Virus record (IMG/VR): IMGVR_UViG_3300005056_000001
Coordinates: 1-64,000 of that record
Length of the DNA: 64,000 bases
Direction: 5' to 3' (one strand)
The translations under genes and the position numbers were made by a program. Below are positions 12,574 to 35,013 of the stretch, in pieces; the stretch's first letter is position 1; every line of letters starts with the position of its first letter. The notes beneath the pieces are model-generated. The model made no database searches and was not told the DNA's origin. It saw only the letters and a list, made by a program, of their open reading frames with translations.

Positions 12574-12957
12574 TTAACTTGCAAAATCAATGGCAACTAT
12601 TTTGTTATTGAGCATACCAAAGGAGTCCATTTTTTCTTCTATCGGAAATTTATATTGATTGTTGTCACCAAACTTTATAAAATTGTCATAATCGAAGGCG
12701 AACCAATCTTTTCTTGTTATCTCGTCACATCGTGGACATATATTCAGAAAACCTCCCCACACAGAAAAATAGATCGGACAAAGCTTGGATGTGTTGTCAC
12801 CTCCTGTCCATTCCTTTTCTGACATATTACCAAGCAGACCCAACAAAAACCCTTTCCATGAGCCTAGTATCGGGAACTTGAAGGCCAATCTTTTTGTCAA
12901 AACAACACACCTACTATGTCCGCACCTCATGGTCGGTCTATATCTATAACCTCCCAA
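12574..12957 (-). CDS. minimal protein-kinase-like fold protein
   Basis: GHSRCV...AFKFP, NMSE, EEKMDSFG, VAIDF in kinase-subdomain order. Confidence 0.5.
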   Translation of the reverse strand: MGGYRYRPTMRCGHSRCVVLTKRLAFKFPILGSWKGFLLGLLGNMSEKEWTGGDNTSKLCPIYFSVWGGFLNICPRCDEITRKDWFAFDYDNFIKFGDNNQYKFPIEEKMDSFGMLNNKIVAIDFAS

Positions 12958-13247
12958 TCTGTGGCATCATGGTCTTTGGTGAATATACCCACATCTTTTT
13001 TTGGACTAACCCATACATCATTGTTGGTTTTTATGTCAACATTGTCTTTTGTGGAAAATAGTCTCCAACGGGTGTATAATACACTTTCACTTGTGCCAAA
13101 ATCAAACATTTTAAACTTGCGTGTGTCGTTTTTTCGTTGGACTATTTTGCCGTCTTTCATTTCTTGCTTTGCCCAATTCCATGAACCCCTAAGCGAATAT
13201 CGTATGACAATCCAATCACGGACTGAAACAACTATTTTCTTAATCAT
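12927..13247 (-). CDS. Tad2/DUF2829-like protein (paralog 1)
   Basis: WNWAKQEMKDGKIVQR...DHDATDWEVI. Confidence 0.5.
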   Translation of the reverse strand: MIKKIVVSVRDWIVIRYSLRGSWNWAKQEMKDGKIVQRKNDTRKFKMFDFGTSESVLYTRWRLFSTKDNVDIKTNNDVWVSPKKDVGIFTKDHDATDWEVIDIDRP

Positions 13248-13534
13248 GTCTCACATTTTGGGTGTATCGGAAGATGTCTCCACCAATAAACATAATAATA
13301 ATCAATGTTGGACTCCAATAGCTCACCCTCTTGATTAATCCATGCCTCATTCGATTCGCTATCTGTATAAATCACAGAAGTTGGTAGTTCGCCAATATCG
13401 TAGTATTCGAAAACATCTTCTATCGTTGCTATTGTGGTGTTAAATTTACCGAACGTTGATTTTTTATATAAAACCAACACTTCAACTCCCTTTTTTGGAA
13501 GATTATCCTTTGTTTTTCTTATCCATTCTTTCAT
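13244..13534 (-). CDS. DUF551-like protein
   Basis: MKEWIRKTKDNLPKKGVEVLV...VYWWRHLPIHP. Confidence 0.65.
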   Translation of the reverse strand: MKEWIRKTKDNLPKKGVEVLVLYKKSTFGKFNTTIATIEDVFEYYDIGELPTSVIYTDSESNEAWINQEGELLESNIDYYYVYWWRHLPIHPKCET

Positions 13535-13535
13535 A

Positions 13536-13814
13536 TCAATAAAATTGTGGCAGGTTATTATCCCACTCAAAAACCTCCCAATCGGTTCTTTTGAGGGTCT
13601 TTAAAAATATATTGGAACTGCTCCAATTGGAGTCCTCCTTGTTGTCGGAAAAGTCCCACACAATTCTTTGGTTTTGTGGGTTGTCAAGTTTATACTTTAT
13701 GGTACCCAAGGCAGAGGCGGGTCGAACAATCCGACCTGCCTCCATCTGTCTAAGTGCCCACTTCCATGTGCCTCTTAATCCAAGTGTGTTTGATATAGTA
13801 TTTTTAATTGACAT
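13536..13814 (-). CDS. Tad2/DUF2829-like protein (paralog 2)
   Basis: WKWALRQMEAGRIVR...W...LKRTDWEVF. Confidence 0.5.
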   Translation of the reverse strand: MSIKNTISNTLGLRGTWKWALRQMEAGRIVRPASALGTIKYKLDNPQNQRIVWDFSDNKEDSNWSSSNIFLKTLKRTDWEVFEWDNNLPQFY

Positions 13815-13866
13815 TGATTGTATGGCTGTGTTTTATGCGTCCAATTTGTGTTTATTCGCATCCTCC

Positions 13867-14100
13867 CTAGTCTTGCAATGTGGATTGAGGCATGTCATCC
13901 TGAAGCTCGGACAATGCCTCAATCAATTCCGACAAACTTTCTCGGGTCAAGTAAAGAGATGCAACCTTTCGATTCGATCGTTCTTGAGTTTTTTCGGTTA
14001 TCGTTAAAATGATTGGCAACGGCCCACTCTTCTCCTCCACACACAGGGTGTTTTCAATAGTTCCAACATTGTCGAATGAGAATTTTGTTTCTTTTTTCAT
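13867..14100 (-). CDS. hypothetical protein
   Basis: ORF. Confidence 0.6.
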   Translation of the reverse strand: MKKETKFSFDNVGTIENTLCVEEKSGPLPIILTITEKTQERSNRKVASLYLTRESLSELIEALSELQDDMPQSTLQD

Positions 14101-14110
14101 TGTGTTATTA

Positions 14111-14596
14111 TTAATTATGTTTATTGTTGACTGTAATTATTTCTCCTAACTCTTCACTGTAGTGTAGATTGTTGACCAAAAGTAACTTTGACAAGAACTC
14201 GTCAAAGTCGTCGGTAATAATCAAACTAATTGTATCTTTTATGCCTATAAACAGATCAATCTCTCTGTTTGGTTTATCTATGTACCCTGCTCCGATGATA
14301 GCTCCGCACTGTAAAAGAAAGAGTGTTCTTGTGGGTGCCCTTGGATATTCCTTGTCAGTTGTATAGTTGTCCCCACACTTGGCATCTTTTCGGCATTCGA
14401 CTAACCCCCTCAGTAGCACACATATTTGCATGAACTCTGTATGATTAAGTGTAATAACTAGTTCGATTGGTGTGTCTTTGCTCCCCTCTTTTCGGGTTTC
14501 ATTAGACCTTACTCCTACTTGCACACATCTACCGTTTTTTAGTGGGTACATCGTGACCGTTACGGGCTCTGTTTCGAATATCGTTTTAATTATCAT
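14111..14596 (-). CDS. hypothetical protein
   Basis: ORF. Confidence 0.65.
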   Translation of the reverse strand: MIIKTIFETEPVTVTMYPLKNGRCVQVGVRSNETRKEGSKDTPIELVITLNHTEFMQICVLLRGLVECRKDAKCGDNYTTDKEYPRAPTRTLFLLQCGAIIGAGYIDKPNREIDLFIGIKDTISLIITDDFDEFLSKLLLVNNLHYSEELGEIITVNNKHN

Positions 14597-14619
14597 ATAT
14601 AATTATTGTTTTATTTTGT

Positions 14620-14901
14620 TTACTCCTCAAATTTCCATGTTCTCCAATCATCGGGTAATACCGTGCCCCTAGTAAAAATAATAATCGGAGTTTCTGTACC
14701 GTCACGGTTTTTAATGCTTTGAATATTCTTACCTTCCTCAAAACGAACGTCTCCGTATGTTTTGAGGGCCTTTAGTATGGCATCTTTGGTGAAATGTAAT
14801 GAGGTATTGATATTATGCACCTCCATACTCTCCTTTAAAATCTCTTCTCTTATCTTTTTTTCCAATTCCTCGGCTGTGCGGTTTTTAATCTTGTTTTTCA
14901 T
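14620..14901 (-). CDS. hypothetical protein, paralog of 14922-15242
   Basis: Shared ELEKKIRE.ILKE.M..HNIN.SLHFTKD.ILKALKT. Confidence 0.7.
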   Translation of the reverse strand: MKNKIKNRTAEELEKKIREEILKESMEVHNINTSLHFTKDAILKALKTYGDVRFEEGKNIQSIKNRDGTETPIIIFTRGTVLPDDWRTWKFEE

Positions 14902-14921
14902 GTGTCCTGTTTTTGTTTGGT

Positions 14922-15242
14922 TTATTCGCAATCCACATCTCCAAATTCTTCGATTCTTATACCCGACGGAGACACATAATCAAAATATACGTCAAGGGGA
15001 GTATTCGGGCCTTCAATAGGTACAATACTGTGTAGCACACCCTCAACAGAAATGTTACGGTTGAGGGTGGTGGTCTTCCCATCAACGATTGTTTTCAGGG
15101 CCTTTAGTATGTCGTCTTTGGTGAAATGTAATGAGTCGTTGATATTATGACCATCCATACCCTCCTTTAAAATCGCTTCTCTTATCTTTTTTTCTAGTTC
15201 AGCGCACATCTTCAATTTGAGTTCCTTTGTCGTTTTGTCCAT
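14922..15242 (-). CDS. hypothetical protein, paralog of 14620-14901
   Basis: Same N-terminal block, unrelated C-terminus. Confidence 0.7.
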   Translation of the reverse strand: MDKTTKELKLKMCAELEKKIREAILKEGMDGHNINDSLHFTKDDILKALKTIVDGKTTTLNRNISVEGVLHSIVPIEGPNTPLDVYFDYVSPSGIRIEEFGDVDCE

Positions 15243-15290
15243 CGTATGTTATTATTAAAAAAAGAGTTTCCATTCAAGAACCTAACGCCA

Positions 15291-18200
15291 TTAAATCAGG
15301 TATTTCTCAAATTCGTAGAACTTCATATTGTCGTTTCCGTAAGTCTTGACAATGTTGTCCATAATGTGTCGGTAATCGCTTGGCAATATCCTAAGCCTGA
15401 CATCACGCTCCTTTGTGTGTGGATTGGTCTTGATTATGAAGAATGTTTTTAGGTTTTCTTCCACACGGTTTTCCAAACGACTTCTGTTGTAGTCGGATAT
15501 CGTGGAAATGCCCTTGACATCATTGTTCATGAGTACCATCGTGGCTAGTTTATAGACAGACATTTTTAGCTTTGCGTATGTGTCTTCTGATATGACATAA
15601 TTGATTTTTGTAAGTGACTCATATGCCTCGAACATTTTCTTTTTGGTGTCCTCGGCAATCCCAATTGTTGATTGGGTATTTGGTTTTGTGTTGTTTGATA
15701 GGTGGAGTGTGATGTCCTTTATCATCTTCTTGCGAATTTTATTTTCTGCACTTTCGAGTGTTTCTATATGACTGCTCATACGTTTTCCTCTTTTTGCCAA
15801 TGCCAATCTTTCTAGCTGTTGAACAACCATAATATAATTGTCCAATATGTCATAGTTCCTGAAGTCGATCAGGTTACTGAACCTTTCTAGTTCGGCAATC
15901 ACCAACCCGTCGGATTTTTCGTTCATACACATGTCAACCAAAATGGAAAAGTTTTTTGGGTTATAGGCATACTGTTTGGCAATGGGCAATAATTTGCTTG
16001 TAATGTTCTTTAGTCGCTTGTGATGTTTCTCGGGATACTCTATAAGCAAGGTCGCACCGTCTCCTTGGTTTATGGTGATTTTATTGTTGTTGCTTGGTAC
16101 CATTTCGGTTTTGCAGGAGCTAATAAAGGACTCAATGTCTTTTGGCTTGGTGGTCTTCAGGAACTCATGAATCTCCTTGGCAACATCCACAGAAAACTTC
16201 TTACGCTCCTCTGAATTCTCGGAACGGCTTTGTTCGATTGCGCCAACAATATGCGGCTCGTCAATATCAATATACGTGGTATTAACACTATTATAATTAT
16301 AGTGTTTTTTAAACATATTGGCAATATATCTAATGTTGGTACCAAGTCGGTTATATTGCTGCTCGGCAATATATCTAAGTACCATTAAATTGTCTTGGAC
16401 AACCTTAATCTCTCCCATGTAGTCTTCATATGTGTAGGTAAACCTTTTGCTAAGGTCTGCCCAAATCGCAATTTTTTGTTGCTCGGTTATTTTTTCGTCA
16501 TTTAACGAAATGTAATGATTGAAATATGCCACACACTTGTCGTCGCTGATTCGGGCCCGCATTTCTCCGTCAATAACCTTGTGTATGCCCTTTAGGAAGC
16601 GATAATCAAGATTGTTGTTATAGTCTCGTTTTAGCTCATAGTATTTCTTTTTATTTTTTTCGGTTTCGTTGTAAACAGAACGGATAAGCGATGTGTTGAT
16701 ATTTTGCTTTCTAAGGCGGTTTCCGAATTGCTCAAGTGTTTGTGCACTATATTTTGCAAAGGTCGAAATAACCTCAATATCTTTGTCCTCCGACAAGTTT
16801 TTAATATCCACACCAACAGACAAGTACACACTACAAAATAAAACCTTGATGTCATTAGGAATCACGGATTGACCGTTGATTGCCTTGGATGTCACACTGT
16901 CCTTGGTGGCCCTTTTGTAGTAATGCCAATCATCTTTTGTCAACGGGTCGCTGTCCATGTGTTCAAGATGGGCATTAATACCCATAACAATTTCCTCGGC
17001 CCGAAAAGATCCCTCGTCTGTTGGACAAATAACGGTTCGATTCTCGATCATGGCCGTGGCAATCTTTTTACACAACAATGTTTTACAGTCCTTGCTAGAA
17101 TTTGTAAGGATGATATTCATATTCTTTTGTGATTGATGCGGAATCTCCAATTTAATATTCCTGACCTCGATTTTTTTACCGCCGTGCTTGACATCCTTTT
17201 CACACATACGAAAAAGGTTGACCTCATAAATATGGGTGCCCGTCATTCCTATAATGAATGGCACTCTTTCGTATGGGTTTTCTTCTTTGTATTGCAACAC
17301 CTCACGAATTCTTTTCAGGGCCATAGTACAGACCGAGTCGGCATCTGCACTACGAATTGTTTCGGTTGCCAATATGTGAATCTCGTCAATTGCAACATAA
17401 TCATAATTTAGCAACAATTCAACATCCATTCTTGAGAACTTATCAAAAGTCACAACAGACGATGTGCCCACCTTAAAGGCTTCCATCATTTCTTTGTTGT
17501 TCTTTGAGCCCGAAAACGGTTTGAATGCCTGTATTGCAGCCACCCAATCCTCTTTTTCTGAGGGGTGCAAATTTTTGTTGTTCATTATTATGTCAATCTC
17601 CCTGTTTTGGGCCTCCATACCAAACTTGGAGTCCATTGGTGCCGTGTAGGGCATAACCAATAAAACCCGTTTGCTGTGCTTTGTTGCCAACTCGGTGAAA
17701 TATGTCGTCTTGCCTGCCCCTGCACGGGCATTGATGTAATTAAAACAGCGTGTGTCAAGAAACTTTTCTAGCAATGGTGCATAGTCACTCATGTAGAATC
17801 CACCCCCAATATCTTCGGGAACAATTTCAATGTCCATATTCATCGGATTTTTGTCTATGAGCAATTGACATGCATTTTTGTAGTTCAAAAATTTGAAATC
17901 GCTGTCGGTAACAACCTTGTCGTTTTGTAATGACAGCACGCTCGCAACCAATTTGGCAACTTTTCCGACTTTTGGGTCAGTACTTTCCATCTGTTTATAG
18001 TACTGTTGTTTAAAATTGGGCAAACCTTCCTTTGTCAGAGTTTGCTCCATTCTTCGAATATACAAACCGCTACTTTTGAACATTTCTATACCCACCTTTC
18101 TGTGTATAGAAGATTTGGTCAGGTAGGTATTTCTCCATGGACACTCGCCGTCATCAAATAGGTGTTCTTCCCATTCATGCGAGTCGTGGTGCGATTTCTT

Positions 18201-20543
18201 TACCTTGACAGAACAAAGAACCTTCATGATGTCCAAATACTTTGAACGTATATTTTTATATACCTCTTTTGGTTTTCCATACGAGGACAGTTTCTCTAGG
18301 TCGTCGCTGCTTGGGTGTTGTTCGCAACTGATTCCGAATTGTGAATTAATCAACCCCTTTAGCAGACTACCAACCTTCATTCGTTTGATGTGGTACTTAA
18401 AATCCTCGGCTTTCCATGCATCCCAATCATCATACTGTATCGGACGGATCAAAGAAATATCAACCTCGAACAAGTCAAACGCCACATCGTCAAAAAGTTT
18501 ATTGTCGTATGCCCCACGGTTTCTATTGACTCGTGCAATAACCTTCTTGTCCAATTTTCGCATCTCACGTATCTCTGACGAGTTTAGCTTTATATTGAAA
18601 CTGTCTGTGGTTTCGACCAAATATCTAAGGTCTGAAGAGCCCGACAGAATATATCTATAATTGTCAAAATTCTTGGACAACGGTTTTAGGTTTTCGCCCA
18701 AACGTTTTTTTACTACTGCAAGGTTGCTGATCTTAATGTTTGTGATATAACACATAGGGATTGCAGACAACACAAAATATTGTTTGTGGTGCATATTGAC
18801 AAACGTCTCGTCGCTGTGTATCAAGGCGATTCCTTGTTCTATTTTACGCATTGAACCATCAAGAATTGTGTCACCACCACCCTTTTTGACCAATCCACCA
18901 ATTGATCCGTCGTCAATTGTTAGCGTTTCGCCAAAAAAATCATGTAGTTCTACATCCTTCAATACTTCCATAACCAAAGTAAATGCATGCGCATAGCCTA
19001 ATTCCTGCAACAACAACGACGATTCGCTATCCTTTTCGGTGTACCTTGGCAAGACTCCGTTGCCTCCCTCCCTGTTCATTGGGGGCGGTTGTAAATACTT
19101 AAAAATGACATGAACCCCTGTTCCTGAAACAGATAGTTTTGACATAAGATAAGGCTCACAGTAGGTATTCGAAAGCCGCTCATGTAGGTATTTTAGTACA
19201 CGAGAGGCAAATTGTTGCTTAACCTTTAGACTTTGTCCCACTCTTTCAATGACGGGTACCAAGGATTGTGTAAATTTTAAATCTAGATCTAAAAATATTA
19301 GACCATTACACATCTCGGCACCAATTCCGAATTTTGTATTCGGTCTTACAGGGGAATGTGTCTGAAACAAGAATGCAATCTTGTCGGACTTAAGGAATTT
19401 TCCGTCAAGAACATAGGGCTCCACAAGATTAAATATCTCTTGTGTGACACCAAACACTTTCTTTGTGTGACTCGCATTCTTGATAGAAGTCGGAAGTGCC
19501 AAAGCAGAAAAACATTCGATTAATTCGCCTATTCTGTAACTGTTGTTGTAACTGCTGACTTTTGTTAGACACTCTTCCCATGTCTCTTTATATTTGGAAT
19601 TTCTAAAGAACGTTTCTATCTTTTTTGTTGATATACTAGAACTATTACAATACGTGAAATATTTCCCTAGCAACGGGAATGGGCTGCTAAACTTTTTTCT
19701 TGCATCCTTTGTGAATAACACGGCAACCTCTGAAAAGCGTGTACCAAAAAACTTTTCTATGGTGTGTGGAAGCTTTAGTTCTTCTTTTTTTCGTAGAAAT
19801 GCCTTTTGTGTGCTGTCGTGGCCCATCTTTGCATAGTCGTATTTGCTGTTGTAGCTTTTTGTCAGGAACACCAACTCGAGTAATGAAAGAAATTCGGTGG
19901 TACCCTCTTCTTGGTTGTTGTTCAGAGACCTGCTAGTCGAGCTTTTTGCATTTTTTGCGGTGGTGTTAATTAGGTTTTTAAGACCGAACCTAGGGTTTGT
20001 TATCTCAAGAAGTGTCTGTATTCCTATACCATTTTCCTCGCAAAAATCCCGACCCTCGTTCGTCATTAACTTTTTGTGGAGCGCACCAAACACCTCAAGC
20101 AATTCGTTTTCGGCCTTGATGTTGTTCTCAATACCATAATCATACTCAAGCCCTTGTTTGTTGTATGGCAATTTTGTCCATTCTTGAAATAGCGGTCTCT
20201 CGAATCCTATCTCGTCCATGAATTTGGCAGACAGCCTTTCGCCTAGATCTCCACGTTTTTTGGCTGTTTTATAAAAATCCCTGTCGATTGACGAGTAGCG
20301 GTAACACTTCAAGAATGCGATCGTGTAAAGAACGGCATCTGCCATATCCAATCTAGACAATCTTAGGGTGTATTTGTTCTGAGTAGGGTCGCTCAGTTCG
20401 GTTTTGCATATGCCGTCAACCTTGTAATTATAAAACGCCATTGTGGCACCGCTCAGAATAGTTTCCTCTAACAAAGACACATCAAGTTCATTGCTGTTTT
20501 TGTTAAAAAAAATTTTCTTTGCAAGCATCCAAAATGAATTCAT
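15291..20543 (-). CDS. AEP primase-polymerase fused to SF2 (origin-binding-type) helicase
   Basis: AEP motifs LIFLDLD and SVSGTGVHVIF; SF2 motifs ARAGAGKTT, AIDEIH, GMTGT, SVGVDI, QFGNRLR. Confidence 0.8.
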   Translation of the reverse strand: MNSFWMLAKKIFFNKNSNELDVSLLEETILSGATMAFYNYKVDGICKTELSDPTQNKYTLRLSRLDMADAVLYTIAFLKCYRYSSIDRDFYKTAKKRGDLGERLSAKFMDEIGFERPLFQEWTKLPYNKQGLEYDYGIENNIKAENELLEVFGALHKKLMTNEGRDFCEENGIGIQTLLEITNPRFGLKNLINTTAKNAKSSTSRSLNNNQEEGTTEFLSLLELVFLTKSYNSKYDYAKMGHDSTQKAFLRKKEELKLPHTIEKFFGTRFSEVAVLFTKDARKKFSSPFPLLGKYFTYCNSSSISTKKIETFFRNSKYKETWEECLTKVSSYNNSYRIGELIECFSALALPTSIKNASHTKKVFGVTQEIFNLVEPYVLDGKFLKSDKIAFLFQTHSPVRPNTKFGIGAEMCNGLIFLDLDLKFTQSLVPVIERVGQSLKVKQQFASRVLKYLHERLSNTYCEPYLMSKLSVSGTGVHVIFKYLQPPPMNREGGNGVLPRYTEKDSESSLLLQELGYAHAFTLVMEVLKDVELHDFFGETLTIDDGSIGGLVKKGGGDTILDGSMRKIEQGIALIHSDETFVNMHHKQYFVLSAIPMCYITNIKISNLAVVKKRLGENLKPLSKNFDNYRYILSGSSDLRYLVETTDSFNIKLNSSEIREMRKLDKKVIARVNRNRGAYDNKLFDDVAFDLFEVDISLIRPIQYDDWDAWKAEDFKYHIKRMKVGSLLKGLINSQFGISCEQHPSSDDLEKLSSYGKPKEVYKNIRSKYLDIMKVLCSVKVKKSHHDSHEWEEHLFDDGECPWRNTYLTKSSIHRKVGIEMFKSSGLYIRRMEQTLTKEGLPNFKQQYYKQMESTDPKVGKVAKLVASVLSLQNDKVVTDSDFKFLNYKNACQLLIDKNPMNMDIEIVPEDIGGGFYMSDYAPLLEKFLDTRCFNYINARAGAGKTTYFTELATKHSKRVLLVMPYTAPMDSKFGMEAQNREIDIIMNNKNLHPSEKEDWVAAIQAFKPFSGSKNNKEMMEAFKVGTSSVVTFDKFSRMDVELLLNYDYVAIDEIHILATETIRSADADSVCTMALKRIREVLQYKEENPYERVPFIIGMTGTHIYEVNLFRMCEKDVKHGGKKIEVRNIKLEIPHQSQKNMNIILTNSSKDCKTLLCKKIATAMIENRTVICPTDEGSFRAEEIVMGINAHLEHMDSDPLTKDDWHYYKRATKDSVTSKAINGQSVIPNDIKVLFCSVYLSVGVDIKNLSEDKDIEVISTFAKYSAQTLEQFGNRLRKQNINTSLIRSVYNETEKNKKKYYELKRDYNNNLDYRFLKGIHKVIDGEMRARISDDKCVAYFNHYISLNDEKITEQQKIAIWADLSKRFTYTYEDYMGEIKVVQDNLMVLRYIAEQQYNRLGTNIRYIANMFKKHYNYNSVNTTYIDIDEPHIVGAIEQSRSENSEERKKFSVDVAKEIHEFLKTTKPKDIESFISSCKTEMVPSNNNKITINQGDGATLLIEYPEKHHKRLKNITSKLLPIAKQYAYNPKNFSILVDMCMNEKSDGLVIAELERFSNLIDFRNYDILDNYIMVVQQLERLALAKRGKRMSSHIETLESAENKIRKKMIKDITLHLSNNTKPNTQSTIGIAEDTKKKMFEAYESLTKINYVISEDTYAKLKMSVYKLATMVLMNNDVKGISTISDYNRSRLENRVEENLKTFFIIKTNPHTKERDVRLRILPSDYRHIMDNIVKTYGNDNMKFYEFEKYLI

Positions 20544-21125: not shown

Positions 21126-24014
21126 ATGCCACTAGAAAATGTAAATCTTAGTAGTATATCAGACAATGTACTAATGTATGTCACACAGTCGCAGGAGTCA
21201 AAAACCTCGATGTCTTCCATACTGACCTCTACAAATGTACCGATTATTTCAAGCATTAACAAGGCTTCTGCATCTGCCATGTCAGAGATTAAAAAGCAAA
21301 CAACGACAATGATTGAGATGCGGACTAGTATGTCTATCATGGCAGAAATGATGTCTGTTCAAAATGATTTACTGTTCGACTATATGGAGTCACCCACCAA
21401 TGGAGCGACCGCCGAAATTAAAGTCGTTGTCGAACACCCTCCCAACCCCGCAGCAGCAGAACTGAAAATAATCATAGGAGCAGGGCCAAACGCAGACAAC
21501 CTAGTCGAGGAGCTTAGTGTGTTAACACAAAACGAGGGGGGCTTTCTTCGTGTTGTTCAACATTTTTCCACGCTTGGTGACACACTTCAGAATAAGTTTT
21601 CGAACCTTAGCGGATCCATGGCACAATTACAGGCAATGACCGAACAGGCAAATGAATTGAACCAAGCCTCAGAAGGAGGAAGCAGCAGCAAGGGCATGTT
21701 AATTGCGGCAGGTGCAATGGCAGTACTAGGATTGGCGGTAATGGCACTAGGACAGGCTTTGAACCCCATGACAGTTGTTGGAATAATAGGAGCAATGGCG
21801 TTGCTAAATGTGGCATCCCGTGGATTCACAGAAGAAGCAGGCAAGGGTATGTTATTTGCATCTGCCGCAATGGTCGTATTCGCCTTGGCCACAAAGGCTT
21901 TTGAGTTCATTAATTATAGTGCCCTATTCAAGGGTGTATTGGCAATGGGTGCGTTTGCCCTTGCGATAGGAGGATTGGCCATGGTGACCAAGGGTACCGA
22001 TATGGTCGCAATGAGCAAAGGATTGATATTGGCATCTGTAGCCATCGGAATACTTGCACTGAGCACCATGCTTTTTGAGACTGTCACACCAACATCCATA
22101 ATCAAGATGGGACTTTCGTTGTTTGCGGTTACTATTGCACTAGCAACACTTGGCAAGGTAAAGGGTATCACAAAAGGCGCAGCAGGATTGTTAATTGCCA
22201 CGGGTGCCGTTGCGTTATTGTCGTTCTCGATATCCATGTATGACGACGTTGAGTTCACTTCGATACTCAAGGTCGGTGCAGCATTGGGTGTTGTATCAAT
22301 CGCATTTTACTTTATGGGACAGGTGGCAGGAGGGATAATCAAGGGAGCATTGACAGGGGTTGTAATGGCGGGCAGTCTAATAATTCTAGGATATGCATTA
22401 AAACAAATATCAAGCGACGATATTGACCCCATGAAAATTCTTAAATTTGGGGCAATAACAGGGGCATTGGCGGCAGGATATACAATAATAAGCCTTGCAA
22501 CACCCGCAATATTAGCTGCTGCCGTTGGTATTACTGCGATCGGTGGTTCAATGTTGGTATTGACACTTGCACTAAATCAGGCGGCAGATGTTAAATTAGA
22601 CGAGGAATCAGGATCAAGATTTGTCGAGGCAGTAAGACAGGCAGGCAAGGCAATGAACGTCCTTGCATGGGACATCGGAATTGTGACAGCAGGAAAGGCC
22701 GCATTGGTTGCGGTTCCTATGGCGGCGGCAATAGTCCCATTGGCCCTTAGTTTCAAACTATTGTCCAACACCAAAATGCCTAGTCAAAAAACTGTTGATA
22801 GCTTTGGTAATGCAGTCAGGGGTATTGCCGACACAATTAGCGGTATCGGAATTGTACAGCTTGGAAAAATAGGCATTGCAACACCCATGCTTATTGGTAT
22901 GGGACTGTCAACAATAACGATGGCCAAGTCTATTAGCTCCTTTTCAAGAATATCCGAGAACCCCGAGGTTATTCAGATGGCCGTTATGGGCGTAGACCAA
23001 TTCATTACAGGATTTGCCTCGACCATGGAAAACAACCAAGGCAATTTCGAGAACATGAGAGGCGGTATCAGGAGCTTGGTAGGTATCAGTGGCTTAATGT
23101 CGGGCGTTGCAACGGGTGTTCAAAAAATGGCCAATCTCGAGTTTACCGAGTCTGAAGTCGTTAATGGGAAGTTAGTGGTCAAGAGTACCCGTAAAATGAC
23201 CACCGATGATTTCAAGAATATGGGAACATCACTTGGAATGGTTATTAATGCACTAACCGAACCACTTGCCAAGGTGGGCGCAAAAGGGAGTGGTGCCACA
23301 TTTTCACTTTTTGGGTATGATGTATTTGCCGTCAATTCAAACGAGGTACAACAGGGTATACAGGCACTTTCAGGAATAGGAAACGTTTTTAATCCTATTG
23401 TGAATGTAATAAAAACATTTTCTGAACACGGTATAGACGCCACGAAAGTCGAAGCGTTTGGTACACTTCTTGGACAATTACTAGGCAGTATCACAAATAC
23501 AATACATTCGTTTGTTCTTGGCGAGGACTCTGATGCCAAATTAGACACGCTTGAACGTTATAGCGGAATCACACAACAATTTTTTGGATTCTTTGGGGCA
23601 ACAGACCTAAGCCCTGCGGTAACAGCCGTCGGACAGTTGGGCGAGAATCTTCTAATGGTCAAGGATGCGCTTAATGAGATTGACATTGACAAGATGAAGC
23701 TCCTTAACGATATCGTTTGGAACACAACACATTTTGAGGAGGCCAATATTGAAATGATGATGAAGCTAATACAAGAGTTGAAAAACTTAATGGGTGTGGT
23801 TGCAAAAAGCGGCGGAGGAGACACGGTAACCGACTCTAGTAGTGTGGGTGACACAACAACAAATGTGTTGACAGAAGAAGACACAGGCACAGAGACCGAT
23901 GTGGTCAAGACAGACAAGAAGTCTGCCTCAATGGATACAAGCAAAATTGAAAGTCTGTTGGGTGATTTGATTGATGTGTTCGACCGTACAGTCAGGGTAA
24001 AGGTAATAGAGTAA
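21126..24014 (+). CDS. tape-measure-like virion protein
   Basis: 962 aa, Ala/Gly-rich with periodic hydrophobic helical repeats; GTACATA motif upstream. Confidence 0.6.
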   Translation: MPLENVNLSSISDNVLMYVTQSQESKTSMSSILTSTNVPIISSINKASASAMSEIKKQTTTMIEMRTSMSIMAEMMSVQNDLLFDYMESPTNGATAEIKVVVEHPPNPAAAELKIIIGAGPNADNLVEELSVLTQNEGGFLRVVQHFSTLGDTLQNKFSNLSGSMAQLQAMTEQANELNQASEGGSSSKGMLIAAGAMAVLGLAVMALGQALNPMTVVGIIGAMALLNVASRGFTEEAGKGMLFASAAMVVFALATKAFEFINYSALFKGVLAMGAFALAIGGLAMVTKGTDMVAMSKGLILASVAIGILALSTMLFETVTPTSIIKMGLSLFAVTIALATLGKVKGITKGAAGLLIATGAVALLSFSISMYDDVEFTSILKVGAALGVVSIAFYFMGQVAGGIIKGALTGVVMAGSLIILGYALKQISSDDIDPMKILKFGAITGALAAGYTIISLATPAILAAAVGITAIGGSMLVLTLALNQAADVKLDEESGSRFVEAVRQAGKAMNVLAWDIGIVTAGKAALVAVPMAAAIVPLALSFKLLSNTKMPSQKTVDSFGNAVRGIADTISGIGIVQLGKIGIATPMLIGMGLSTITMAKSISSFSRISENPEVIQMAVMGVDQFITGFASTMENNQGNFENMRGGIRSLVGISGLMSGVATGVQKMANLEFTESEVVNGKLVVKSTRKMTTDDFKNMGTSLGMVINALTEPLAKVGAKGSGATFSLFGYDVFAVNSNEVQQGIQALSGIGNVFNPIVNVIKTFSEHGIDATKVEAFGTLLGQLLGSITNTIHSFVLGEDSDAKLDTLERYSGITQQFFGFFGATDLSPAVTAVGQLGENLLMVKDALNEIDIDKMKLLNDIVWNTTHFEEANIEMMMKLIQELKNLMGVVAKSGGGDTVTDSSSVGDTTTNVLTEEDTGTETDVVKTDKKSASMDTSKIESLLGDLIDVFDRTVRVKVIE

Positions 24015-29185: not shown

Positions 29186-29203
29186 AATTTATAATTTTTT
29201 GTA

Positions 29204-29842: not shown

Positions 29843-29880
29843 TATTATGTTTTTTGAGTTACTATGTTGTTTTTGAATTA

Positions 29881-30477: not shown

Positions 30478-30567
30478 GATTATTATTTTATTAACAATAC
30501 TCTAATATACAACAGTTTTTTGAATACACAAGCACATCGGACTATATTAACATTATTTTAACACTTT

Positions 30568-31182
30568 CTATTTTTGGCTGTCACGGCGTGTTTTTACTGT
30601 AGGCTTAAACATACCCGAGAATATTAAACCACCTGCAAGATCCAACATGAGATCATCAATCTCGCCACCATGAAAATCTTTTAGCCAATCAAAAACATTG
30701 GATACTGTGTGAATTTGGGTTGGAGTGTATTCCTTGGTGATAAAATCAAGTTTTGGAAGATGCTTTTTGTCTGCAATTAATACAGAAAGACTCATGGAGC
30801 CGTCAATGATAAATTTCATGTGCTCACCTGTCTTGTATGCGAAGTAGCCTTGTAATACAGGTTTATTGTCATAATTGGCAATATCTGTTGTGTCTTCGCC
30901 CTTGATTAGTTTTAATTTACCTTTTGTGTTTGTGATAATTTTTGCGATATTGGTACTATTAACATCCCATAATGTACTGTCAGACATTTTTTGACACCCC
31001 TTAATGTCATACATAACGCCGTCAATATGACATATATCAAACTCTTTCATGCTTGACATTGGATTGTGTGCCACGACAAAGCTATTTTCGATATCCAAAC
31101 CCGAAACCTTGAACATGTTGTTTACTTGCTCAAGAGAAAATCCGAGTGATTTTAGGTATTCGATTGTGGTTAATTTTTTCAT
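30568..31182 (-). CDS. hypothetical protein
   Basis: Start MKKLTT after the promoter at 31221-31281. Confidence 0.7.
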   Translation of the reverse strand: MKKLTTIEYLKSLGFSLEQVNNMFKVSGLDIENSFVVAHNPMSSMKEFDICHIDGVMYDIKGCQKMSDSTLWDVNSTNIAKIITNTKGKLKLIKGEDTTDIANYDNKPVLQGYFAYKTGEHMKFIIDGSMSLSVLIADKKHLPKLDFITKEYTPTQIHTVSNVFDWLKDFHGGEIDDLMLDLAGGLIFSGMFKPTVKTRRDSQK

Positions 31183-31220
31183 GTTTCGTTGTGTATTAAT
31201 GATTACTATTGATTGCCTTA

Positions 31221-31281
31221 CAAATATAGGCAAAAATCCGTACCTAAAAGAATAGATACGGATTTTAACATTTCTTTAACA
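31221..31281 (-). promoter_or_regulatory. host-type promoter, hairpin and TTAACA-N5-TTAACA box
   Basis: Near copy of 2663-2724. Confidence 0.75.
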
Positions 31282-31288
31282 CTTTATA

Positions 31289-31582
31289 TCATAACAGATT
31301 CAACTTACGCTGCAATTCGCACAACACAGCCATTTTCTTCACAATACTAGAATGATCAGGAGGAAAATTTTCTCTGAGTTTATTTACCCGACCAAGCACA
31401 CGATCAAAAATATATGATAGCGCAGCCTTATTATTATCAAAACATTTCATTCCGTTGGACTGTAAATCCCATGAAGACTTATACCCCTTTGGAGTAAACC
31501 TGTCGCAGTTTTCTGAAAGTGTACCAAACACCCTGTTAGAGCTATTTTGTTTTGGTTCTACAAAAAAGTAAAATTTATCCAT
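31289..31582 (-). CDS. hypothetical protein
   Basis: ORF. Confidence 0.6.
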   Translation of the reverse strand: MDKFYFFVEPKQNSSNRVFGTLSENCDRFTPKGYKSSWDLQSNGMKCFDNNKAALSYIFDRVLGRVNKLRENFPPDHSSIVKKMAVLCELQRKLNLL

Positions 31583-31606
31583 ATTATTTTATGATGTTTT
31601 TTGGCT

Positions 31607-31933
31607 TTACACGCCATAGTGCTTTATCGTTTCGGGATGCACCGAAACATTTTTAATCTTCAATATATCCACAAGGTGTTCGCTGTCGGGTTCGTCAGAC
31701 AATGGCAAAACAAGTTTCCCGTCCAAAAACTCATACGTACCTTCTTGTGTATCATAAATTCCCTCCGAAAAAATAAGGTCTCTATGTAGAATCTTAAAGA
31801 TTTTTGAATAAGCCCCTTTATACATCCTAGAAACTCCCCTAACCAACTCGTAAGGGTCACCTTTGATTTGTATTAGGAGCTTAAATTTCGGTGCTGCTAC
31901 TAACTCTTGTATTGGTCTTTGTACTCGTTTCAT
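31607..31933 (-). CDS. putative internal head protein (MKRVQ leader)
   Basis: MKRVQRPIQE leader. Confidence 0.5.
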   Translation of the reverse strand: MKRVQRPIQELVAAPKFKLLIQIKGDPYELVRGVSRMYKGAYSKIFKILHRDLIFSEGIYDTQEGTYEFLDGKLVLPLSDEPDSEHLVDILKIKNVSVHPETIKHYGV

Positions 31934-32058
31934 GATTGGTTTTTTACATGGACTAATCTATATGATCAGTCGTAACAATACTCAAATATACAACACTTTT
32001 TGAATATCTAGGCATTTTGCATTATTTTAACATTTCTTTAACAAAAATTACCCTACAA

Positions 32059-32490
32059 TCATTTCGGACTAGGCAACAACTCGCTCTTCATTGCCTTGAC
32101 ATAATCCCTAGACAGGTTCCGATTGAATTGAGGGGTGTATTCCCTGTGCTCGATGGCATAATTAACAGTATCAATAAGAGACTGTACCACATTGTTATCA
32201 AACATAAATCCATTATCTCTCAAATAGATGTTATCAAAAAGTTCGTCGGTAAAGTCGTGTTTACCATTATTGATTCTGTCATACCGTACCGCCTGACGTT
32301 GTGTTAGAACCGCAAGCATTTGGTATAAATTCTTGGTGCTTTTTTCTTGTGCCTCCTTGTTGTAATTTTTCTTTGGAGACAAGAATGTTCTTATATATAA
32401 AACAACATCCATATAGGACATGTATTTTATAAAGTCAGGAATCTTTGATTCGTTGGTATTCACACTTGCTGTTTTTTGTACTCGTTTCAT
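32059..32490 (-). CDS. putative internal head protein (MKRVQ leader)
   Basis: MKRVQKTASVNTNES leader; GTACATA upstream. Confidence 0.5.
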   Translation of the reverse strand: MKRVQKTASVNTNESKIPDFIKYMSYMDVVLYIRTFLSPKKNYNKEAQEKSTKNLYQMLAVLTQRQAVRYDRINNGKHDFTDELFDNIYLRDNGFMFDNNVVQSLIDTVNYAIEHREYTPQFNRNLSRDYVKAMKSELLPSPK

Positions 32491-32522
32491 GATTATTTTT
32501 TAAGATATGTACAGATTAAAAC

Positions 32523-33158
32523 CTAAATAAATATTCTAAAGTTGGTCTGAATGTGATTATTAATAACCTGCTTGATGTCGCTATACTGCTTGGTCAAGTC
32601 TTGGATACTAGCCCATCCTTTGATTTCCCCCGCAGGAACTTTTCGGATAACCTCCAAAAAACCGTGGAGCATGGCATCCGTGTCCAACATAAGAAATTTT
32701 GAAAGTGGATAGGACAATTTTCCTGTTTTGTATCCAATAAATATAGGACAACTATCCGAAACCTCGGCAGTTTCCTTGTAGTCAAAGCAAAAAGACAAGG
32801 AATCATATTCTCTTAGCTTAGTATATAGGTCTTTGTATTGAGCCAACGACAGATAATCTAGTCTGTCAAACGTCCGAACACTTTGATTGGTGTCATTGAG
32901 CATTCGGAACGCCGTAAGCAACACATAGGTATCGTTTTCGTCCTTACAGACATAGATGTCGGTTCCTTTATTAATACCAACAGGATTTGTTGGTGTCAGA
33001 TACATAACCCTGTCGGGTTGGTATCCGTGGCCCGCACATGTTTTTTCTATTCTGTCGGATAGTCCCTTACCAACCTGTCTGAGCTCAATCCCGTTAGGAT
33101 TCGTGATTTTGCGTTCGCACATCATATCACGTGCATGTTTTGTTATAAAAAATTCCAT
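32523..33158 (-). CDS. hypothetical protein
   Basis: ORF with N-terminal ITKHARDMM.ER motif. Confidence 0.7.
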   Translation of the reverse strand: MEFFITKHARDMMCERKITNPNGIELRQVGKGLSDRIEKTCAGHGYQPDRVMYLTPTNPVGINKGTDIYVCKDENDTYVLLTAFRMLNDTNQSVRTFDRLDYLSLAQYKDLYTKLREYDSLSFCFDYKETAEVSDSCPIFIGYKTGKLSYPLSKFLMLDTDAMLHGFLEVIRKVPAGEIKGWASIQDLTKQYSDIKQVINNHIQTNFRIFI

Positions 33159-33312
33159 TTTAATTGATTATTGCTCCATCGAGCGATTGTTTAATTCCTG
33201 ACATTTATGTCGTCAGGATCATTGCCTTACAATAATAAGAAGAAAAATCCATACCAACAAGTGTTGGTATGGATTTTAACGTTTAATTAACACTTCGTGT
33301 GGATAACCGACA

Positions 33313-33612
33313 CTAACCGAATAAATCGGATCGCTCATGTGGTTTGTCAAGCCACACATCACATTCCTTGGCTGCCTTGTCACCCATCAATTTGGCATCA
33401 TGCAGCGAAACACAGGATATTTTCACAACAGGGTCACGCTTACACATTATCGGCATAGACCAAGAATCCATATATTCAACAACAAATCGTGAAGGTTTGT
33501 CATTGTATTGGACAATGATAATCTCATACCTGTTGCCACAGTCCCACATTAAATATGTGTCGGCCTCTTTTGGTTCCTTTATCCAATCTGCATGGTATGT
33601 GTGTTTTTCCAT
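33313..33612 (-). CDS. hypothetical protein
   Basis: ORF; start MEKHTY. Confidence 0.6.
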   Translation of the reverse strand: MEKHTYHADWIKEPKEADTYLMWDCGNRYEIIIVQYNDKPSRFVVEYMDSWSMPIMCKRDPVVKISCVSLHDAKLMGDKAAKECDVWLDKPHERSDLFG

Positions 33613-33631
33613 TGTGTTATTTATGGTTGTG

Positions 33632-33835
33632 TTAATAATCGCCATTATCAGAGAAAACAACGGATTCTTCATCTACCGAATATGATCTTATCCGTCCTGC
33701 ATCAATATCATCCGATAGACCTATCTTGATTCGTTCGTCCTGTATTAAGCCCTTGGCCTGTTCAAAAGATTCTGCAACCACGGTTACTTGGGCACTCACG
33801 TACATTCCGTTACCTACCCATATATAAATTTTCAT
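33632..33835 (-). CDS. hypothetical protein
   Basis: ORF. Confidence 0.6.
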   Translation of the reverse strand: MKIYIWVGNGMYVSAQVTVVAESFEQAKGLIQDERIKIGLSDDIDAGRIRSYSVDEESVVFSDNGDY

Positions 33836-33847
33836 AATTAGTGTTGT

Positions 33848-34384
33848 TTATTCTTGTGGAATACTACAATCAAGCTCCTCTAATTCCCCCACAACATCAA
33901 GCCCCAATTGGGCAGCCTCTGCGTTGGTTTGTTCCATGGCAGTTGTGTCATTGTCGGACTCAAAAATTAATGTGATTCCGTTGCTAAGATTTTGTGTGTA
34001 TGACACAACCATACTCTTATCAAGGGCGAGCCAAGCATTCCATGCATCACCACAAGAGTCCCACAGGATATTATCACGATTTTCGTCATGCAATATATTG
34101 CGATGGTGGTCGGATAATTTTCCGTCTTTTCCTAATAGTTGATTTTCTGTCTTCAAGACCCAAAGAGGATTACCATCTTTTTTAGAAACTGCCTCAATGA
34201 TTACATTTCTGTTTGTGACAGGACACTTTCCCATGTCAAATTTTGTGGCTGTTTCTAGCCATTCAGATTTAAGCATATTTTTTGATTTTGACCATACACA
34301 CAAGGCGTAACTTGGTCGAATAATAAAAATCTTGTACATATATCCACCTATACAAGATTTTATATAATGTATAAAGCGAGACAC
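33848..34384 (-). CDS. hypothetical protein
   Basis: ORF. Confidence 0.65.
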   Translation of the reverse strand: MSRFIHYIKSCIGGYMYKIFIIRPSYALCVWSKSKNMLKSEWLETATKFDMGKCPVTNRNVIIEAVSKKDGNPLWVLKTENQLLGKDGKLSDHHRNILHDENRDNILWDSCGDAWNAWLALDKSMVVSYTQNLSNGITLIFESDNDTTAMEQTNAEAAQLGLDVVGELEELDCSIPQE

Positions 34385-34397
34385 TGCTCATCAATTA

Positions 34398-34652
34398 CTA
34401 TTTAAAATAGAAATTATTGGGTAGTTTATTTTTACAGGCTGTACCAATCATAAAAACTCCCATGTCGCCTTCGAAATCGTCTTCCGAACTAACCAAATTT
34501 GAGCCATTGTCTACCAAGTGCACCCAATACTTAGGTTTTTTGATAACCTTCCCACAGCAAATACAGGCATTCTCAACCCCCTCGTCATAATCATCCGACT
34601 GTATATCACTTAGAGGGATTTTGAATATCCACCTATTAATAGCATTGCTCAT
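34398..34652 (-). CDS. hypothetical Zn-binding protein
   Basis: CICCGK...GTAC. Confidence 0.6.
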   Translation of the reverse strand: MSNAINRWIFKIPLSDIQSDDYDEGVENACICCGKVIKKPKYWVHLVDNGSNLVSSEDDFEGDMGVFMIGTACKNKLPNNFYFK

Positions 34653-34740
34653 GATTTTCTGTTTAAAAAATGTTCTACCGTATTGGTATATTCAAATGTA
34701 CAACAAAAAATCCAAAGTGTTTAATTTTAATGTATTATTT

Positions 34741-35013
34741 TTACCATTTGGCAATAATATTCAATTTCGGATGAACAACCTCATAGTCGGTATGCTGTTC
34801 TCGTGTCAAATGATGCGTGGCGTCTTCCCATACGGCGTCTTCTAAATCCCTTGAGAATGTGCGTCGTAATAGGGCATTTTCGGGCGTATCAATACAGAGC
34901 TTAAGAGTGCCTGTCCAATGTTTACACCTCACAATTCTGCCTTTAAGCATTTGGTGTTTAGCCCATGACCAAGAACCCTTTAATCCAAATGTTATTATAA
35001 TCCATTTTTTCAT
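34741..35013 (-). CDS. Tad2/DUF2829-like protein (paralog 3)
   Basis: WSWAKHQMLKGRIVRCKHWTG...W...EQHTDYEVV. Confidence 0.5.
   Translation of the reverse strand: MKKWIIITFGLKGSWSWAKHQMLKGRIVRCKHWTGTLKLCIDTPENALLRRTFSRDLEDAVWEDATHHLTREQHTDYEVVHPKLNIIAKW

What the first reader, a model, noticed from the sequence alone, without database searches (positions are those of the whole stretch)
12927..35013. Three Tad2/DUF2829-like paralogs: possible expanded nucleotide-sponge arsenal
Seen: 12927-13247, 13536-13814 and 34741-35013 share L(R/K)G(S/T)W.WA..(E/Q)M..G.IV and end in TD(W/Y)EV. Established: Tad2 (DUF2829) has the pattern F..AL..(L/M)K.G..V.R..W...D..A.DW and sequesters Thoeris/CBASS signals. 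Inference: divergent paralogs with different ligand specificities and a Trp-rich N-terminal extension.
Basis: partly seen in the sequence, partly recalled or inferred. Interest (0 to 1): 0.62.

Follow-up and report, generated by a model that had tools for sequence, protein, structure and literature searches.

The report
Three divergent Tad2-fold proteins, jumbo phage
A 368-kb uncultured phage carries three old, diverged copies of a small protein that has the fold of Tad2, a phage "sponge" that soaks up bacterial immune signals, but with a changed binding-pocket motif, so the copies probably bind signals other than the classic Thoeris molecule, though this is unproven.

Summary
Three minus-strand ORFs (12927-13247, 13536-13814, 34741-35013) are real paralogs (pairwise BLASTP E 6e-19 to 7e-8) and the only three copies in the 368,109-bp phage genome. 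The Tad2 reading is supported for fold and remote homology, but not for Pfam membership or the pocket motif.

- **Fold:** AlphaFold models of two paralogs (pLDDT 86.7 and 81.5) match solved Tad2 structures first in two aligners (ModTad2 and HgmTad2/AcrIIA7, Z 8.8-9.6, rmsd 1.9-2.2 A; unrelated chains Z 3.6 or less).
- **Other support:** BFVD, the ESM Atlas, a bridge clade (one member passes Pfam's Tad2-like cut-off) and hhalign all agree.
- **Self-association:** predicted at ipSAE 0.48 against a best control of 0.01.
- **Against membership:** the window proteins fail PF11195 (9.9 bits or no hit; cut-off 25). Tad2's invariant ligand pair W25-N26 is replaced (ALG, DTR, WTG). The family also has a conserved extra N-terminal segment and an invariant Trp on helix 1.
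- **Distribution:** the family has 143 cluster representatives and 231 IMG/VR contigs, no cultured phage, and one copy per genome elsewhere.

Most likely these are oligomeric small-molecule sponges with three different, non-canonical specificities. No ligand is shown. I rate it a new variant of a known kind, of moderate interest.

The parts
13536..13814 (-). Paralog 2 (92 aa), a Tad2-fold protein; pocket-equivalent residues A35-L36-G37, W64, T73, D78-W79
   Evidence: ORF. Model pLDDT 86.7. Foldseek PDB ranks 1-12 are all Tad2. VIA Z 9.6 to HgmTad2/AcrIIA7 and 9.5 to ModTad2. Self-association ipSAE 0.48 against control 0.01.
13244..13534 (-). 96-aa ORF between paralogs 2 and 1; its ATG lies 1 nt after the paralog 2 stop and its stop overlaps the paralog 1 ATG (ATGA). 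Function unknown; DUF551-like is a lead only.
   Evidence: Sequence read. No Pfam or PHROG hit. Atlas score 0.88 to a DUF551 cluster.
12927..13247 (-). Paralog 1 (106 aa), the most divergent Tad2-fold copy: helical N-terminal extension (residues 9-16), inserted loop at residues 60-78; pocket-equivalent residues D-T-R, W, D73, TDW
   Evidence: ORF. Model pLDDT 81.5. VIA Z 8.8 to ModTad2 and 8.8 to HgmTad2, rmsd 1.9 A. Pfam Tad2-like E 1.4 over profile positions 2-73/73.
12574..12930 (-). 118-aa ORF whose ATG overlaps the paralog 1 stop (ATGA); phrog_4301, function unknown; last gene of the coupled four-gene string
   Evidence: Sequence. phrog_4301 E 4.6e-13.
34741..35013 (-). Paralog 3 (90 aa), a Tad2-fold family member in the W-x-G / TDY subclade; pocket-equivalent residues W-T-G, W, R73, TDY
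   Evidence: ORF. 40% identity to paralog 2, E 6e-19. Family profile E 1.3e-47. Tree placement. Not folded on its own.

Best explanation
The three genes encode small proteins of a distinct, mostly unannotated clade of the Tad2 (DUF2829) superfamily. Shown by computation: each is a roughly 75-residue Tad2 core (helix 1, antiparallel sheet, short helix 3, last strand) preceded by a conserved clade-specific N-terminal segment, and the protein is predicted to self-associate. Inferred: like Tad2, they act as early-expressed oligomeric sponges whose pockets form between subunits and hold a small, probably nucleotide-derived, host immune signal, so the defence effector is never switched on. The pocket is remodelled. 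The scaffold and the W73- and D79-equivalent positions are kept family-wide (W64 in 101/105, D73 in 73/105). Tad2's invariant W25-N26 is replaced by a variable residue plus Thr/Ser, and a new invariant Trp (W19) appears on helix 1. The three copies differ at exactly these positions (ALG/T, DTR/D plus an inserted loop, WTG/R). The likeliest reading is therefore three different ligand specificities, none of them the canonical gcADPR mode. Two copies are translationally coupled in one four-gene string, so they are made together.
For: Paralogy. Fold: two independent models. Foldseek PDB top 12 are all Tad2, TM up to 0.73, rmsd 2.3-2.4 A. VIA-align over 48,161 chains puts HgmTad2/AcrIIA7 and ModTad2 first at Z 9.6/9.5 and 8.8/8.8, with unrelated chains at 3.6 or less. 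The named BFVD top hits are Tad2-like/DUF2829 proteins. ESM Atlas neighbours carry PF11195. Sequence bridge: family member P0124 scores 27.4 bits on PF11195 (cut-off 25) over the full profile, and hits the window profile at E 1.9e-5 in 1.8 billion proteins. hhalign gives bridge clade vs rest 99.9% (E 7e-38) and bridge clade vs Tad2 81.6% (P 1.1e-5), with reversed controls under 1%. Oligomer: ipSAE 0.48 against a best control of 0.01, runs agreeing in at least 65% of contacts, partner pLDDT at least 77; the interface uses helix 1 (21, 24-25), residue 43, residues 48-51 and residues 66-72 and 74, that is, the beta4-alpha3 segment that lines the Tad2 pocket (mark reached by 20 of 30 solved homo-pairs and 1 of 23 single chains; four copies and my own alignment differ from the calibration). 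Pocket mapping. Nucleotide link: P0123 fuses the domain to a dATP/dGTP diphosphohydrolase N-terminal domain. Phage accessory context: strings of small unknown genes. Copy number: three here against one elsewhere, and one of only four families with three or more paralogs in this genome.
Against: No ligand binding or anti-defence activity is shown. The window proteins fail Pfam PF11195 (9.9 bits or no hit), and whole-family hhalign against a narrow Tad2 alignment reaches only 49% over 23 columns. N26 is absent from all three copies and W25 is present only in copy 3, although W21A/N22A abolishes gcADPR binding in HgmTad2. The C-terminal residue mapping (W64 to W73, D73 to D79) rests on a low-confidence alignment extension, not on a superposition I could inspect. 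Foldseek E-values are modest (0.04-0.15). The oligomer pass may reflect the model's memory of Tad2 complexes, and the tetramer geometry was not verified. The host and its defence systems are unknown. A weaker fold match to a phage 812 neck decoration protein exists (Z 5.7-6.8).
Confidence: 0.5

Rival explanations
1. They are ordinary Tad2 proteins that sequester Thoeris gcADPR in the canonical pocket and have simply diverged in sequence.
For: Same fold as SPO1 Tad2, ModTad2 and HgmTad2. The W73- and D79-equivalent positions are conserved across the family. Copy 3 keeps a Trp at the W25 position followed by T-G.
Against: N26 is invariant in 50 Tad2 relatives but is not among the common residues at that column in 105 family members and is absent from all three window copies. 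The W25 equivalent is A in copy 2 and D in copy 1. The published W21A/N22A mutant loses gcADPR binding, and only about 1% of Tad2 proteins were predicted to lack this site.
Confidence: 0.12
2. The Tad2 fold has been reused for a job that does not involve small-molecule sequestration: for example a protein-binding inhibitor of a host factor, or a virion (neck) decoration or assembly protein.
For: The third-ranked structural match for both models is a phage 812 neck chain (8qkh_S, Z 6.8 and 5.7), in a structure whose neck carries dimeric decoration proteins. One relative (P0003) lies directly upstream of a large terminase gene. The canonical ligand pair is lost.
Against: The neck match is much poorer (rmsd 4.4-5.2 A) than the Tad2 matches (1.9-2.2 A). 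In this window and in other relatives the genes sit among short unknown genes, not in structural modules. Three diverged copies are unusual for a structural protein. The W64 and D73 pocket-equivalent positions stay conserved.
Confidence: 0.2
3. The ORFs are not expressed genes, or the resemblance is chance.
For: No RNA data were found. No Shine-Dalgarno-like sequence precedes the starts of copies 2 and 3.
Against: There are 143 significant relatives in an exhaustive search (70 at E below 1e-10), 231 viral contigs, confident folds, and stop/start coupling with neighbouring genes.
Confidence: 0.01

Closest known systems
SPO1 Tad2 (Thoeris anti-defence 2; PDB 8SME/8SMF/8SMG, 8WJE; Pfam PF11195)
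   Same: Size (89 aa against 90-106). Topology of N-terminal helix, antiparallel sheet, short helix and last strand. TM up to 0.73 and rmsd 2.3-2.4 A. Scaffold residues aligned: A10/A20, G17/G27, V20/V30, D84-W85/D78-W79. Phage-encoded. Predicted self-association.
   Different: W25-N26 is not conserved. About 11 extra conserved N-terminal residues ([WF]-[IL]-I-R-x-[FL]-G-L-[KR]-G-[ST]). Invariant W19 where Tad2 has E9. A shorter beta2-beta3 insertion. The window proteins are below Pfam's threshold. Ligand unknown.
ModTad2 / MoTad2 (Myroides odoratus prophage; PDB 9EIB, 8V3E)
   Same: Best or joint-best structural match for both models (Z 9.5 and 8.8, rmsd 2.1 and 1.9 A over 65 residues). It shows that Tad2-fold proteins can bind signals other than gcADPR (His-ADPR, and cUMP in a second pocket).
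   Different: 12-17% identity. It is a detectable Tad2 family member with experimentally shown ligands; nothing comparable is shown here.
HgmTad2 = AcrIIA7 (PDB 8KBI-8KBM, 8WJC, 9KZR)
   Same: Joint-best structural match (Z 9.6 and 8.8). Weak profile hit to 9kzr_A (E 0.31). In HgmTad2 an insertion in the sheet region creates a second, cyclic-dinucleotide pocket. Paralog 1 also has an insertion in the sheet region (residues 60-78).
   Different: The paralog 1 insertion is modelled with low confidence and has no sequence likeness to the HgmTad2 insertion. The W21-N22-G23 motif is not kept.
Phage 812 neck chain 8qkh_S (decoration protein)
   Same: Third-ranked fold match (Z 6.8 and 5.7).
   Different: Much higher rmsd (4.4-5.2 A). 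A 148-aa two-part protein in a structural module. No sequence link was found.

Membership tests
Tad2-like / DUF2829 (Pfam PF11195) | Scores at or above the curated Pfam gathering cut-off (25 bits) | tested here: not met
   Paralog 1 scores 9.9 bits (E 1.4, though spanning profile positions 2-73/73); paralogs 2 and 3 give no hit. The genome-wide scan gives the same. Of 105 family members, 6 hit at E 0.01 or below, and one (P0124, 27.4 bits) passes the cut-off.
Tad2-like / DUF2829 (Pfam PF11195) | Tad2 fold: N-terminal helix, five-stranded antiparallel sheet, short helix before the last strand | tested here: met
   Models. Tad2 structures rank first in Foldseek and VIA-align (Z 8.8-9.6, next unrelated 3.6 or less). 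BFVD; Atlas.
Tad2-like / DUF2829 (Pfam PF11195) | Detectable sequence homology to authentic Tad2 proteins | tested here: inconclusive
   hhalign whole family vs Tad2: 48.6%, P 1.8e-4, 23 columns. Bridge clade vs Tad2: 81.6%, P 1.1e-5. Bridge vs rest: 99.9%. Reversed controls under 1%. The link is transitive, not direct.
Tad2 sponges (functional class) | Ligand-contacting residues W25, N26, W73, D79 (SPO1 numbering) | tested here: not met
   Position 35 (=W25): A, D and W in copies 2, 1 and 3. Position 36 (=N26): L, T, T, with N in none. Position 64 (=W73, low-confidence mapping): W in all three. Position 73 (=D79, same caveat): T, D, R.
Tad2 sponges (functional class) | Homotetramer with pockets at subunit interfaces | tested here: inconclusive
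   A four-copy co-fold supports self-association (ipSAE 0.48 against best control 0.01; at least 65% contact agreement; pLDDT at least 77). Only one symmetric interface is reported with confidence, the geometry was not compared with Tad2, and the job differs from the calibration.
Tad2 sponges (functional class) | Binds and sequesters an immune signalling molecule and rescues phage from Thoeris, CBASS or Pycsar | not testable with these tools
   Needs biochemistry and infection assays.
Phage neck decoration proteins (phage 812 type) | Encoded in or near the structural module and present in the virion | tested here: not met
   Neighbours in the window are short genes of unknown function with no structural-protein hits. 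Virion presence cannot be tested here.

The most novel reading that the evidence does not exclude
This is a separate clade of Tad2-fold sponges whose pocket has been rebuilt (invariant W19 on helix 1 and Thr/Ser at the N26 position, with the W64 and D73 positions retained). It captures immune signals that canonical Tad2 does not, possibly signals of defence systems not yet described. The jumbo phage carries three specificities, and the two co-translated copies might even form mixed oligomers.
Probability: 0.25. Interest if true: 0.75.

Novelty: new variant of a known kind. Interest (0 to 1): 0.55.

Why it matters
Phage sponges have repeatedly served as probes for discovering bacterial immune signals. 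A recent survey notes that a quarter of tested sponge homologs (19 of 84) inhibited none of seven systems and may bind unknown signals. A Tad2-fold clade that keeps the scaffold but changes the ligand-contacting pair, and that one jumbo phage keeps in three diverged versions, is a concrete set of candidates for new specificities. The clade is confined to uncultured phages: no cultured phage among 50,697 records, and only two of about 185,000 bacterial species' genomes. It is mostly invisible to Pfam and PHROGs, so current annotation pipelines would miss it.

Tried and rejected
- **DNA search:** megablast of both loci against 50,697 phage records found nothing.
- **Protein search of phage records:** tblastn with paralog 2 and with a relative found only one unannotated metagenomic record.
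- **Word-based protein search:** it found only the query itself, so the exhaustive search was used.
- **Family libraries:** NCBIfam had no hit and PADLOC only one weak, insignificant hit.
- **PDB sequence search:** the 3-sequence profile gave only chance ribosomal hits. The 105-sequence profile gave only E 0.3 to AcrIIA7.
- **First hhalign:** on the untrimmed alignment it gave 22% and was redone on trimmed profiles.
- **'Transcriptional regulator' reading:** rejected, because SPO1 Tad2 itself touches phrog_643.
- **Viral contig scan:** The search for related loci with the 105-row alignment failed for lack of a conserved stretch and was repeated with 20 rows.
- **Tree:** it could not resolve whether the three copies share one origin (the quick tree was used because the careful search did not finish).
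- **Other sponge families:** PF13876 and PF21825 were not found in the genome. I chose PF13876 from memory as an Acb2-type family.
- **Habitat:** sequencing-run search gave only small shares (seawater, subsurface) and no RNA.
- **Homotetramer geometry:** only self-association is supported, and the Tad2-like arrangement was not verified.
Full report
**1. What is there**

The window is the first 64 kb of a 368,109-bp IMG/VR virus record with direct terminal repeats, that is, a jumbo phage. It has about 38% GC, four tRNA genes and very few Pfam-recognisable genes.

They align with 17 invariant columns, including the quoted motif and the C-terminal TD[WY]EV. Pairwise BLASTP E-values are 6e-19, 7e-8 and 4e-12.

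A full-sensitivity hmmsearch of every six-frame ORF of the genome finds these three and nothing else (next hit E 0.6).

**2. Gene organisation**

Reading the sequence shows a translationally coupled string of four genes:
- The copy 2 stop (TGA, 13538-13536) is followed one base later by the ATG (13534) of a 96-aa ORF.
- That ORF's stop overlaps the ATG of copy 1 (ATGA, 13247-13244).
- The stop of copy 1 overlaps the ATG (12930) of a 118-aa ORF, which matches phrog_4301 of unknown function (E 4.6e-13).

Copies 2 and 1 are therefore made from one message with two unknown partners. Copy 3 stands 21 kb away after a 21-nt spacer. All the neighbours scanned lack any functional annotation. The consensus promoter and terminator scan was no better than shuffles.

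**3. Direct family tests fail**

- Pfam Tad2-like (PF11195) gives only E 1.4 (9.9 bits, cut-off 25) for copy 1 and nothing for the others.
- NCBIfam gives no hit. PHROGs and PADLOC give only insignificant ones.
- The word-indexed protein search found only the query.
- Cultured-phage records hold no relative except one unannotated metagenomic record.

**4. The family**

The exhaustive profile search of 1.84 billion cluster representatives returned 143 proteins at E below 1e-3, 70 of them below 1e-10. The consensus is ..[WF][IL]IRx[FL]GL[KR]G[ST]WxWAxRQMxxGxIV....[TS]G..KY..D.....R..W.F........W..A..FL.D...TDW.

Conserved positions among 105 members: W19 is invariant (105/105), followed by G15 (104), A20 (103), G27 (103), W64 (101), M24 (99) and W17 (90).

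IMG/VR holds 231 contigs with a relative. Only two of about 185,000 species genomes have one, Vibrio olivae and a Ferruginibacter MAG (this was a strict pattern search). Contexts are strings of small unknown phage genes, and in one case the gene lies directly upstream of a large terminase.

**5. Fold**

AlphaFold2 with the 105-row alignment gives copy 2 a confident model (pLDDT 86.7, pTM 0.74). Its elements are helix 17-25, strands 29-32, 40-43 and 51-54, a short strand at 65-66, helix 71-75 and strand 79-82. This is the published Tad2 topology.

- **Foldseek against the PDB:** ranks 1-12 are all Tad2 structures (ModTad2 9EIB; SPO1 Tad2 8SMF/8SME/8SMG/8WJE). TM reaches 0.73 and rmsd 2.3-2.4 A over about 80 columns, with probability 1.0 but modest E-values of 0.04-0.18.
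- **VIA-align against 48,161 representative chains** (independent of Foldseek): HgmTad2/AcrIIA7 at Z 9.6 (rmsd 2.2 A over 67 residues) and ModTad2 at Z 9.5 (2.1 A over 65). A phage 812 neck chain follows at 6.8 (5.2 A), then nothing above 3.6.
- **Copy 1, folded separately** (pLDDT 81.5): ModTad2 and HgmTad2 both at Z 8.8 (rmsd 1.9 A), the neck chain at 5.7, and the rest at 3.4 or less.
- **BFVD:** the named top hits are 'Thoeris anti-defense 2-like' or DUF2829 proteins.
- **ESM Atlas:** the protein sits next to clusters carrying PF11195, both by language-model features (0.90-0.91) and by structure.

Copy 3 was not folded on its own. It is 40% identical to copy 2.

**6. Sequence bridge**

I located SPO1 Tad2 in its genome with the Pfam model (84.8 bits) and collected 50 relatives, all PF11195-positive.

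- hhalign of the trimmed family profile against this narrow Tad2 profile gives 48.6% probability and P 1.8e-4, confidently over 23 columns (helix 1, strand 1 and the following loop). When extended, it places the family's D73...T-D78-W79 on Tad2's D79...E-D84-W85.
- A 14-member clade of the family is closer to Tad2. P0124 passes Pfam's own cut-off (27.4 bits, profile positions 2-73/73), with P0096 at 23.2 and P0113 at 20.1 bits.
- That clade matches the rest of the family at 99.9% (E 7e-38) and Tad2 at 81.6% (P 1.1e-5). Reversed-profile controls give under 1%.

Together with the structural results, I consider remote homology to Tad2 well supported (about 0.9). It remains transitive, and the three window proteins are not Pfam members.

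**7. The pocket**

Published ligand contacts are W25, N26, W73 and D79 in SPO1 Tad2, and W21, N22, G23, W87, L88 and S90/T92/D93 in HgmTad2. The W21A/N22A mutant loses gcADPR binding, and only about 1% of Tad2 proteins were predicted to lack the site. All four residues are invariant in my 50 Tad2 sequences.

In the new family:

| Position (Tad2 equivalent) | Family (of 105) | Copy 2 | Copy 1 | Copy 3 |
|---|---|---|---|---|
| 35 (W25) | variable: A 21, D 19, W 15 | A | D | W |
| 36 (N26) | T 41, S 26; N not among the common residues | L | T | T |
| 37 (G27) | G 69 | G | R | G |
| 64 (W73) | W 101 | W | W | W |
| 73 (D79) | D 73 | T | D | R |

Copy 1 also has an inserted loop (residues 60-78) that is modelled with low confidence.

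Across the family, W at position 35 goes with loss of D73 (Fisher p 0.002, not corrected for phylogeny). This suggests at least two pocket types.

The N-terminal mapping is confident. The C-terminal mapping is from a low-confidence alignment extension and needs a superposition, which I could not make.

**8. Oligomer**

A four-copy co-fold of copy 2 passes the tool's mark: ipSAE 0.48 (runs 0.52, 0.42, 0.48) against a best control of 0.01. The runs agree in at least 65% of contacts, and the partner pLDDT is at least 77. The mark was reached by 20 of 30 solved homo-pairs and by 1 of 23 single chains. This job, with four copies and my own alignment, differs from that calibration.

The confident symmetric interface uses residues 21 and 24-25 (helix 1), 43, 48-51, 66-72 and 74. 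That includes the beta4-alpha3 segment that lines the inter-subunit pocket in Tad2.

This supports self-association. It does not show a Tad2-like tetramer, and the pass may partly reflect the model's memory of solved Tad2 complexes.

**9. Copy number and origin**

- All 84 related loci have one copy within 10 kb either side.
- Five large or complete relatives have one copy in the whole contig.
- In this genome only four protein families have three or more paralogs at BLAST E below 1e-6, and this is one of them.
- In a poorly resolved quick tree (91 columns), the three copies do not group together. Copy 3 sits with a W-x-G/TDY subclade, and copy 1 sits on a long branch beside P0123. A single origin is not excluded.
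- At superfamily level, several Tad2-fold proteins in one phage are not unprecedented: Lactobacillus phage Iacchus gives three BFVD hits and Semele gives two.

**10. Functional hints**

P0123 fuses the domain to a dATP/dGTP diphosphohydrolase N-terminal domain (PF18909, E 7e-9), which links the family to nucleotide metabolism. No canonical Tad2, PF13876 or PF21825 gene was detected in the genome.

Tad2-fold proteins are already known to bind His-ADPR, N7-cADPR, cUMP/cCMP and cyclic dinucleotides, some in second pockets. A changed pocket in this fold is therefore a plausible route to a new specificity.

**11. Verdict**

Its interpretation is right about the fold and superfamily, and reasonable but unproven about function.

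The three proteins are best described as members of a divergent, largely unannotated clade of the Tad2 superfamily. That clade has a remodelled pocket motif and a conserved N-terminal addition. I put about 0.5 on the statement that they are oligomeric sponges for small immune signals with differing, non-canonical specificities. I put 0.12 on ordinary gcADPR-binding Tad2, 0.2 on a non-sponge reuse of the fold, and about 0.01 on artefact; the remainder I leave unassigned.

Whether the clade was already swept into the published 2,783-sequence Tad2 set (collected by HHpred probability above 0.9 to PF11195) cannot be told from here.

Noticed in passing
window 12574-13814 (- strand): Four genes joined by stop/start overlaps or a 1-nt gap: copy 2, a 96-aa ORF (DUF551-like by Atlas features only, score 0.88), copy 1, and a 118-aa ORF matching phrog_4301. 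The two unknown partners may act together with the Tad2-fold proteins.
   Followed up: partly
window 14620-14931 and 14922-15242 (- strand): Two adjacent, overlapping ORFs of about 105 aa are paralogs of each other (shared ELEKKIRE..ILKE.M..HNIN.SLHFTKD.ILKALKT); no family hit.
   Followed up: partly
window 56516-57433 and genome 65-100 kb: One large paralog family dominates the genome-wide survey (about 40 ORF entries, including opposite-strand shadows); its first member lies in the window. Only four families in the genome have three or more paralogs.
   Followed up: no
window 60362-63328 (- strand): A 988-aa fusion of an N6-adenine DNA methylase (N6_Mtase/Eco57I) with a DEAD/Helicase_C helicase; possibly a restriction-modification-like or anti-restriction enzyme.
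   Followed up: no
window 1190-2236 (+ strand): A 348-aa patatin-like phospholipase (E 6e-10) encoded by the phage.
   Followed up: no
window 15291-20543 (- strand) and 21126-24014 (+ strand): Very large ORFs (1750 and 962 aa) with no Pfam match at E 0.001 or below.
   Followed up: no
window 50885-51704 (- strand): A cluster of four tRNA genes (Ser-TGA, Tyr-GTA, His-GTG, Ala-TGC).
   Followed up: no
window 13815-13835 and 35014-35034: No Shine-Dalgarno-like sequence before the starts of copies 2 and 3 (A-rich leaders). This would fit a host that does not rely on SD, but the host was not identified. Partial DNA matches came from seawater and subsurface metagenomes only.
   Followed up: partly
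P0123 (relative; 266 aa): A natural fusion of a dATP/dGTP diphosphohydrolase N-terminal domain (residues 37-108) with this family's domain (122-191). It is the nearest tree neighbour of copy 1.
   Followed up: partly
PDB 8qkh chain S (phage 812 neck): A virion neck chain shows a weaker Tad2-like fold match (Z 5.7-6.8). No link between Tad2 and this protein is mentioned in the phage 812 paper.
   Followed up: partly
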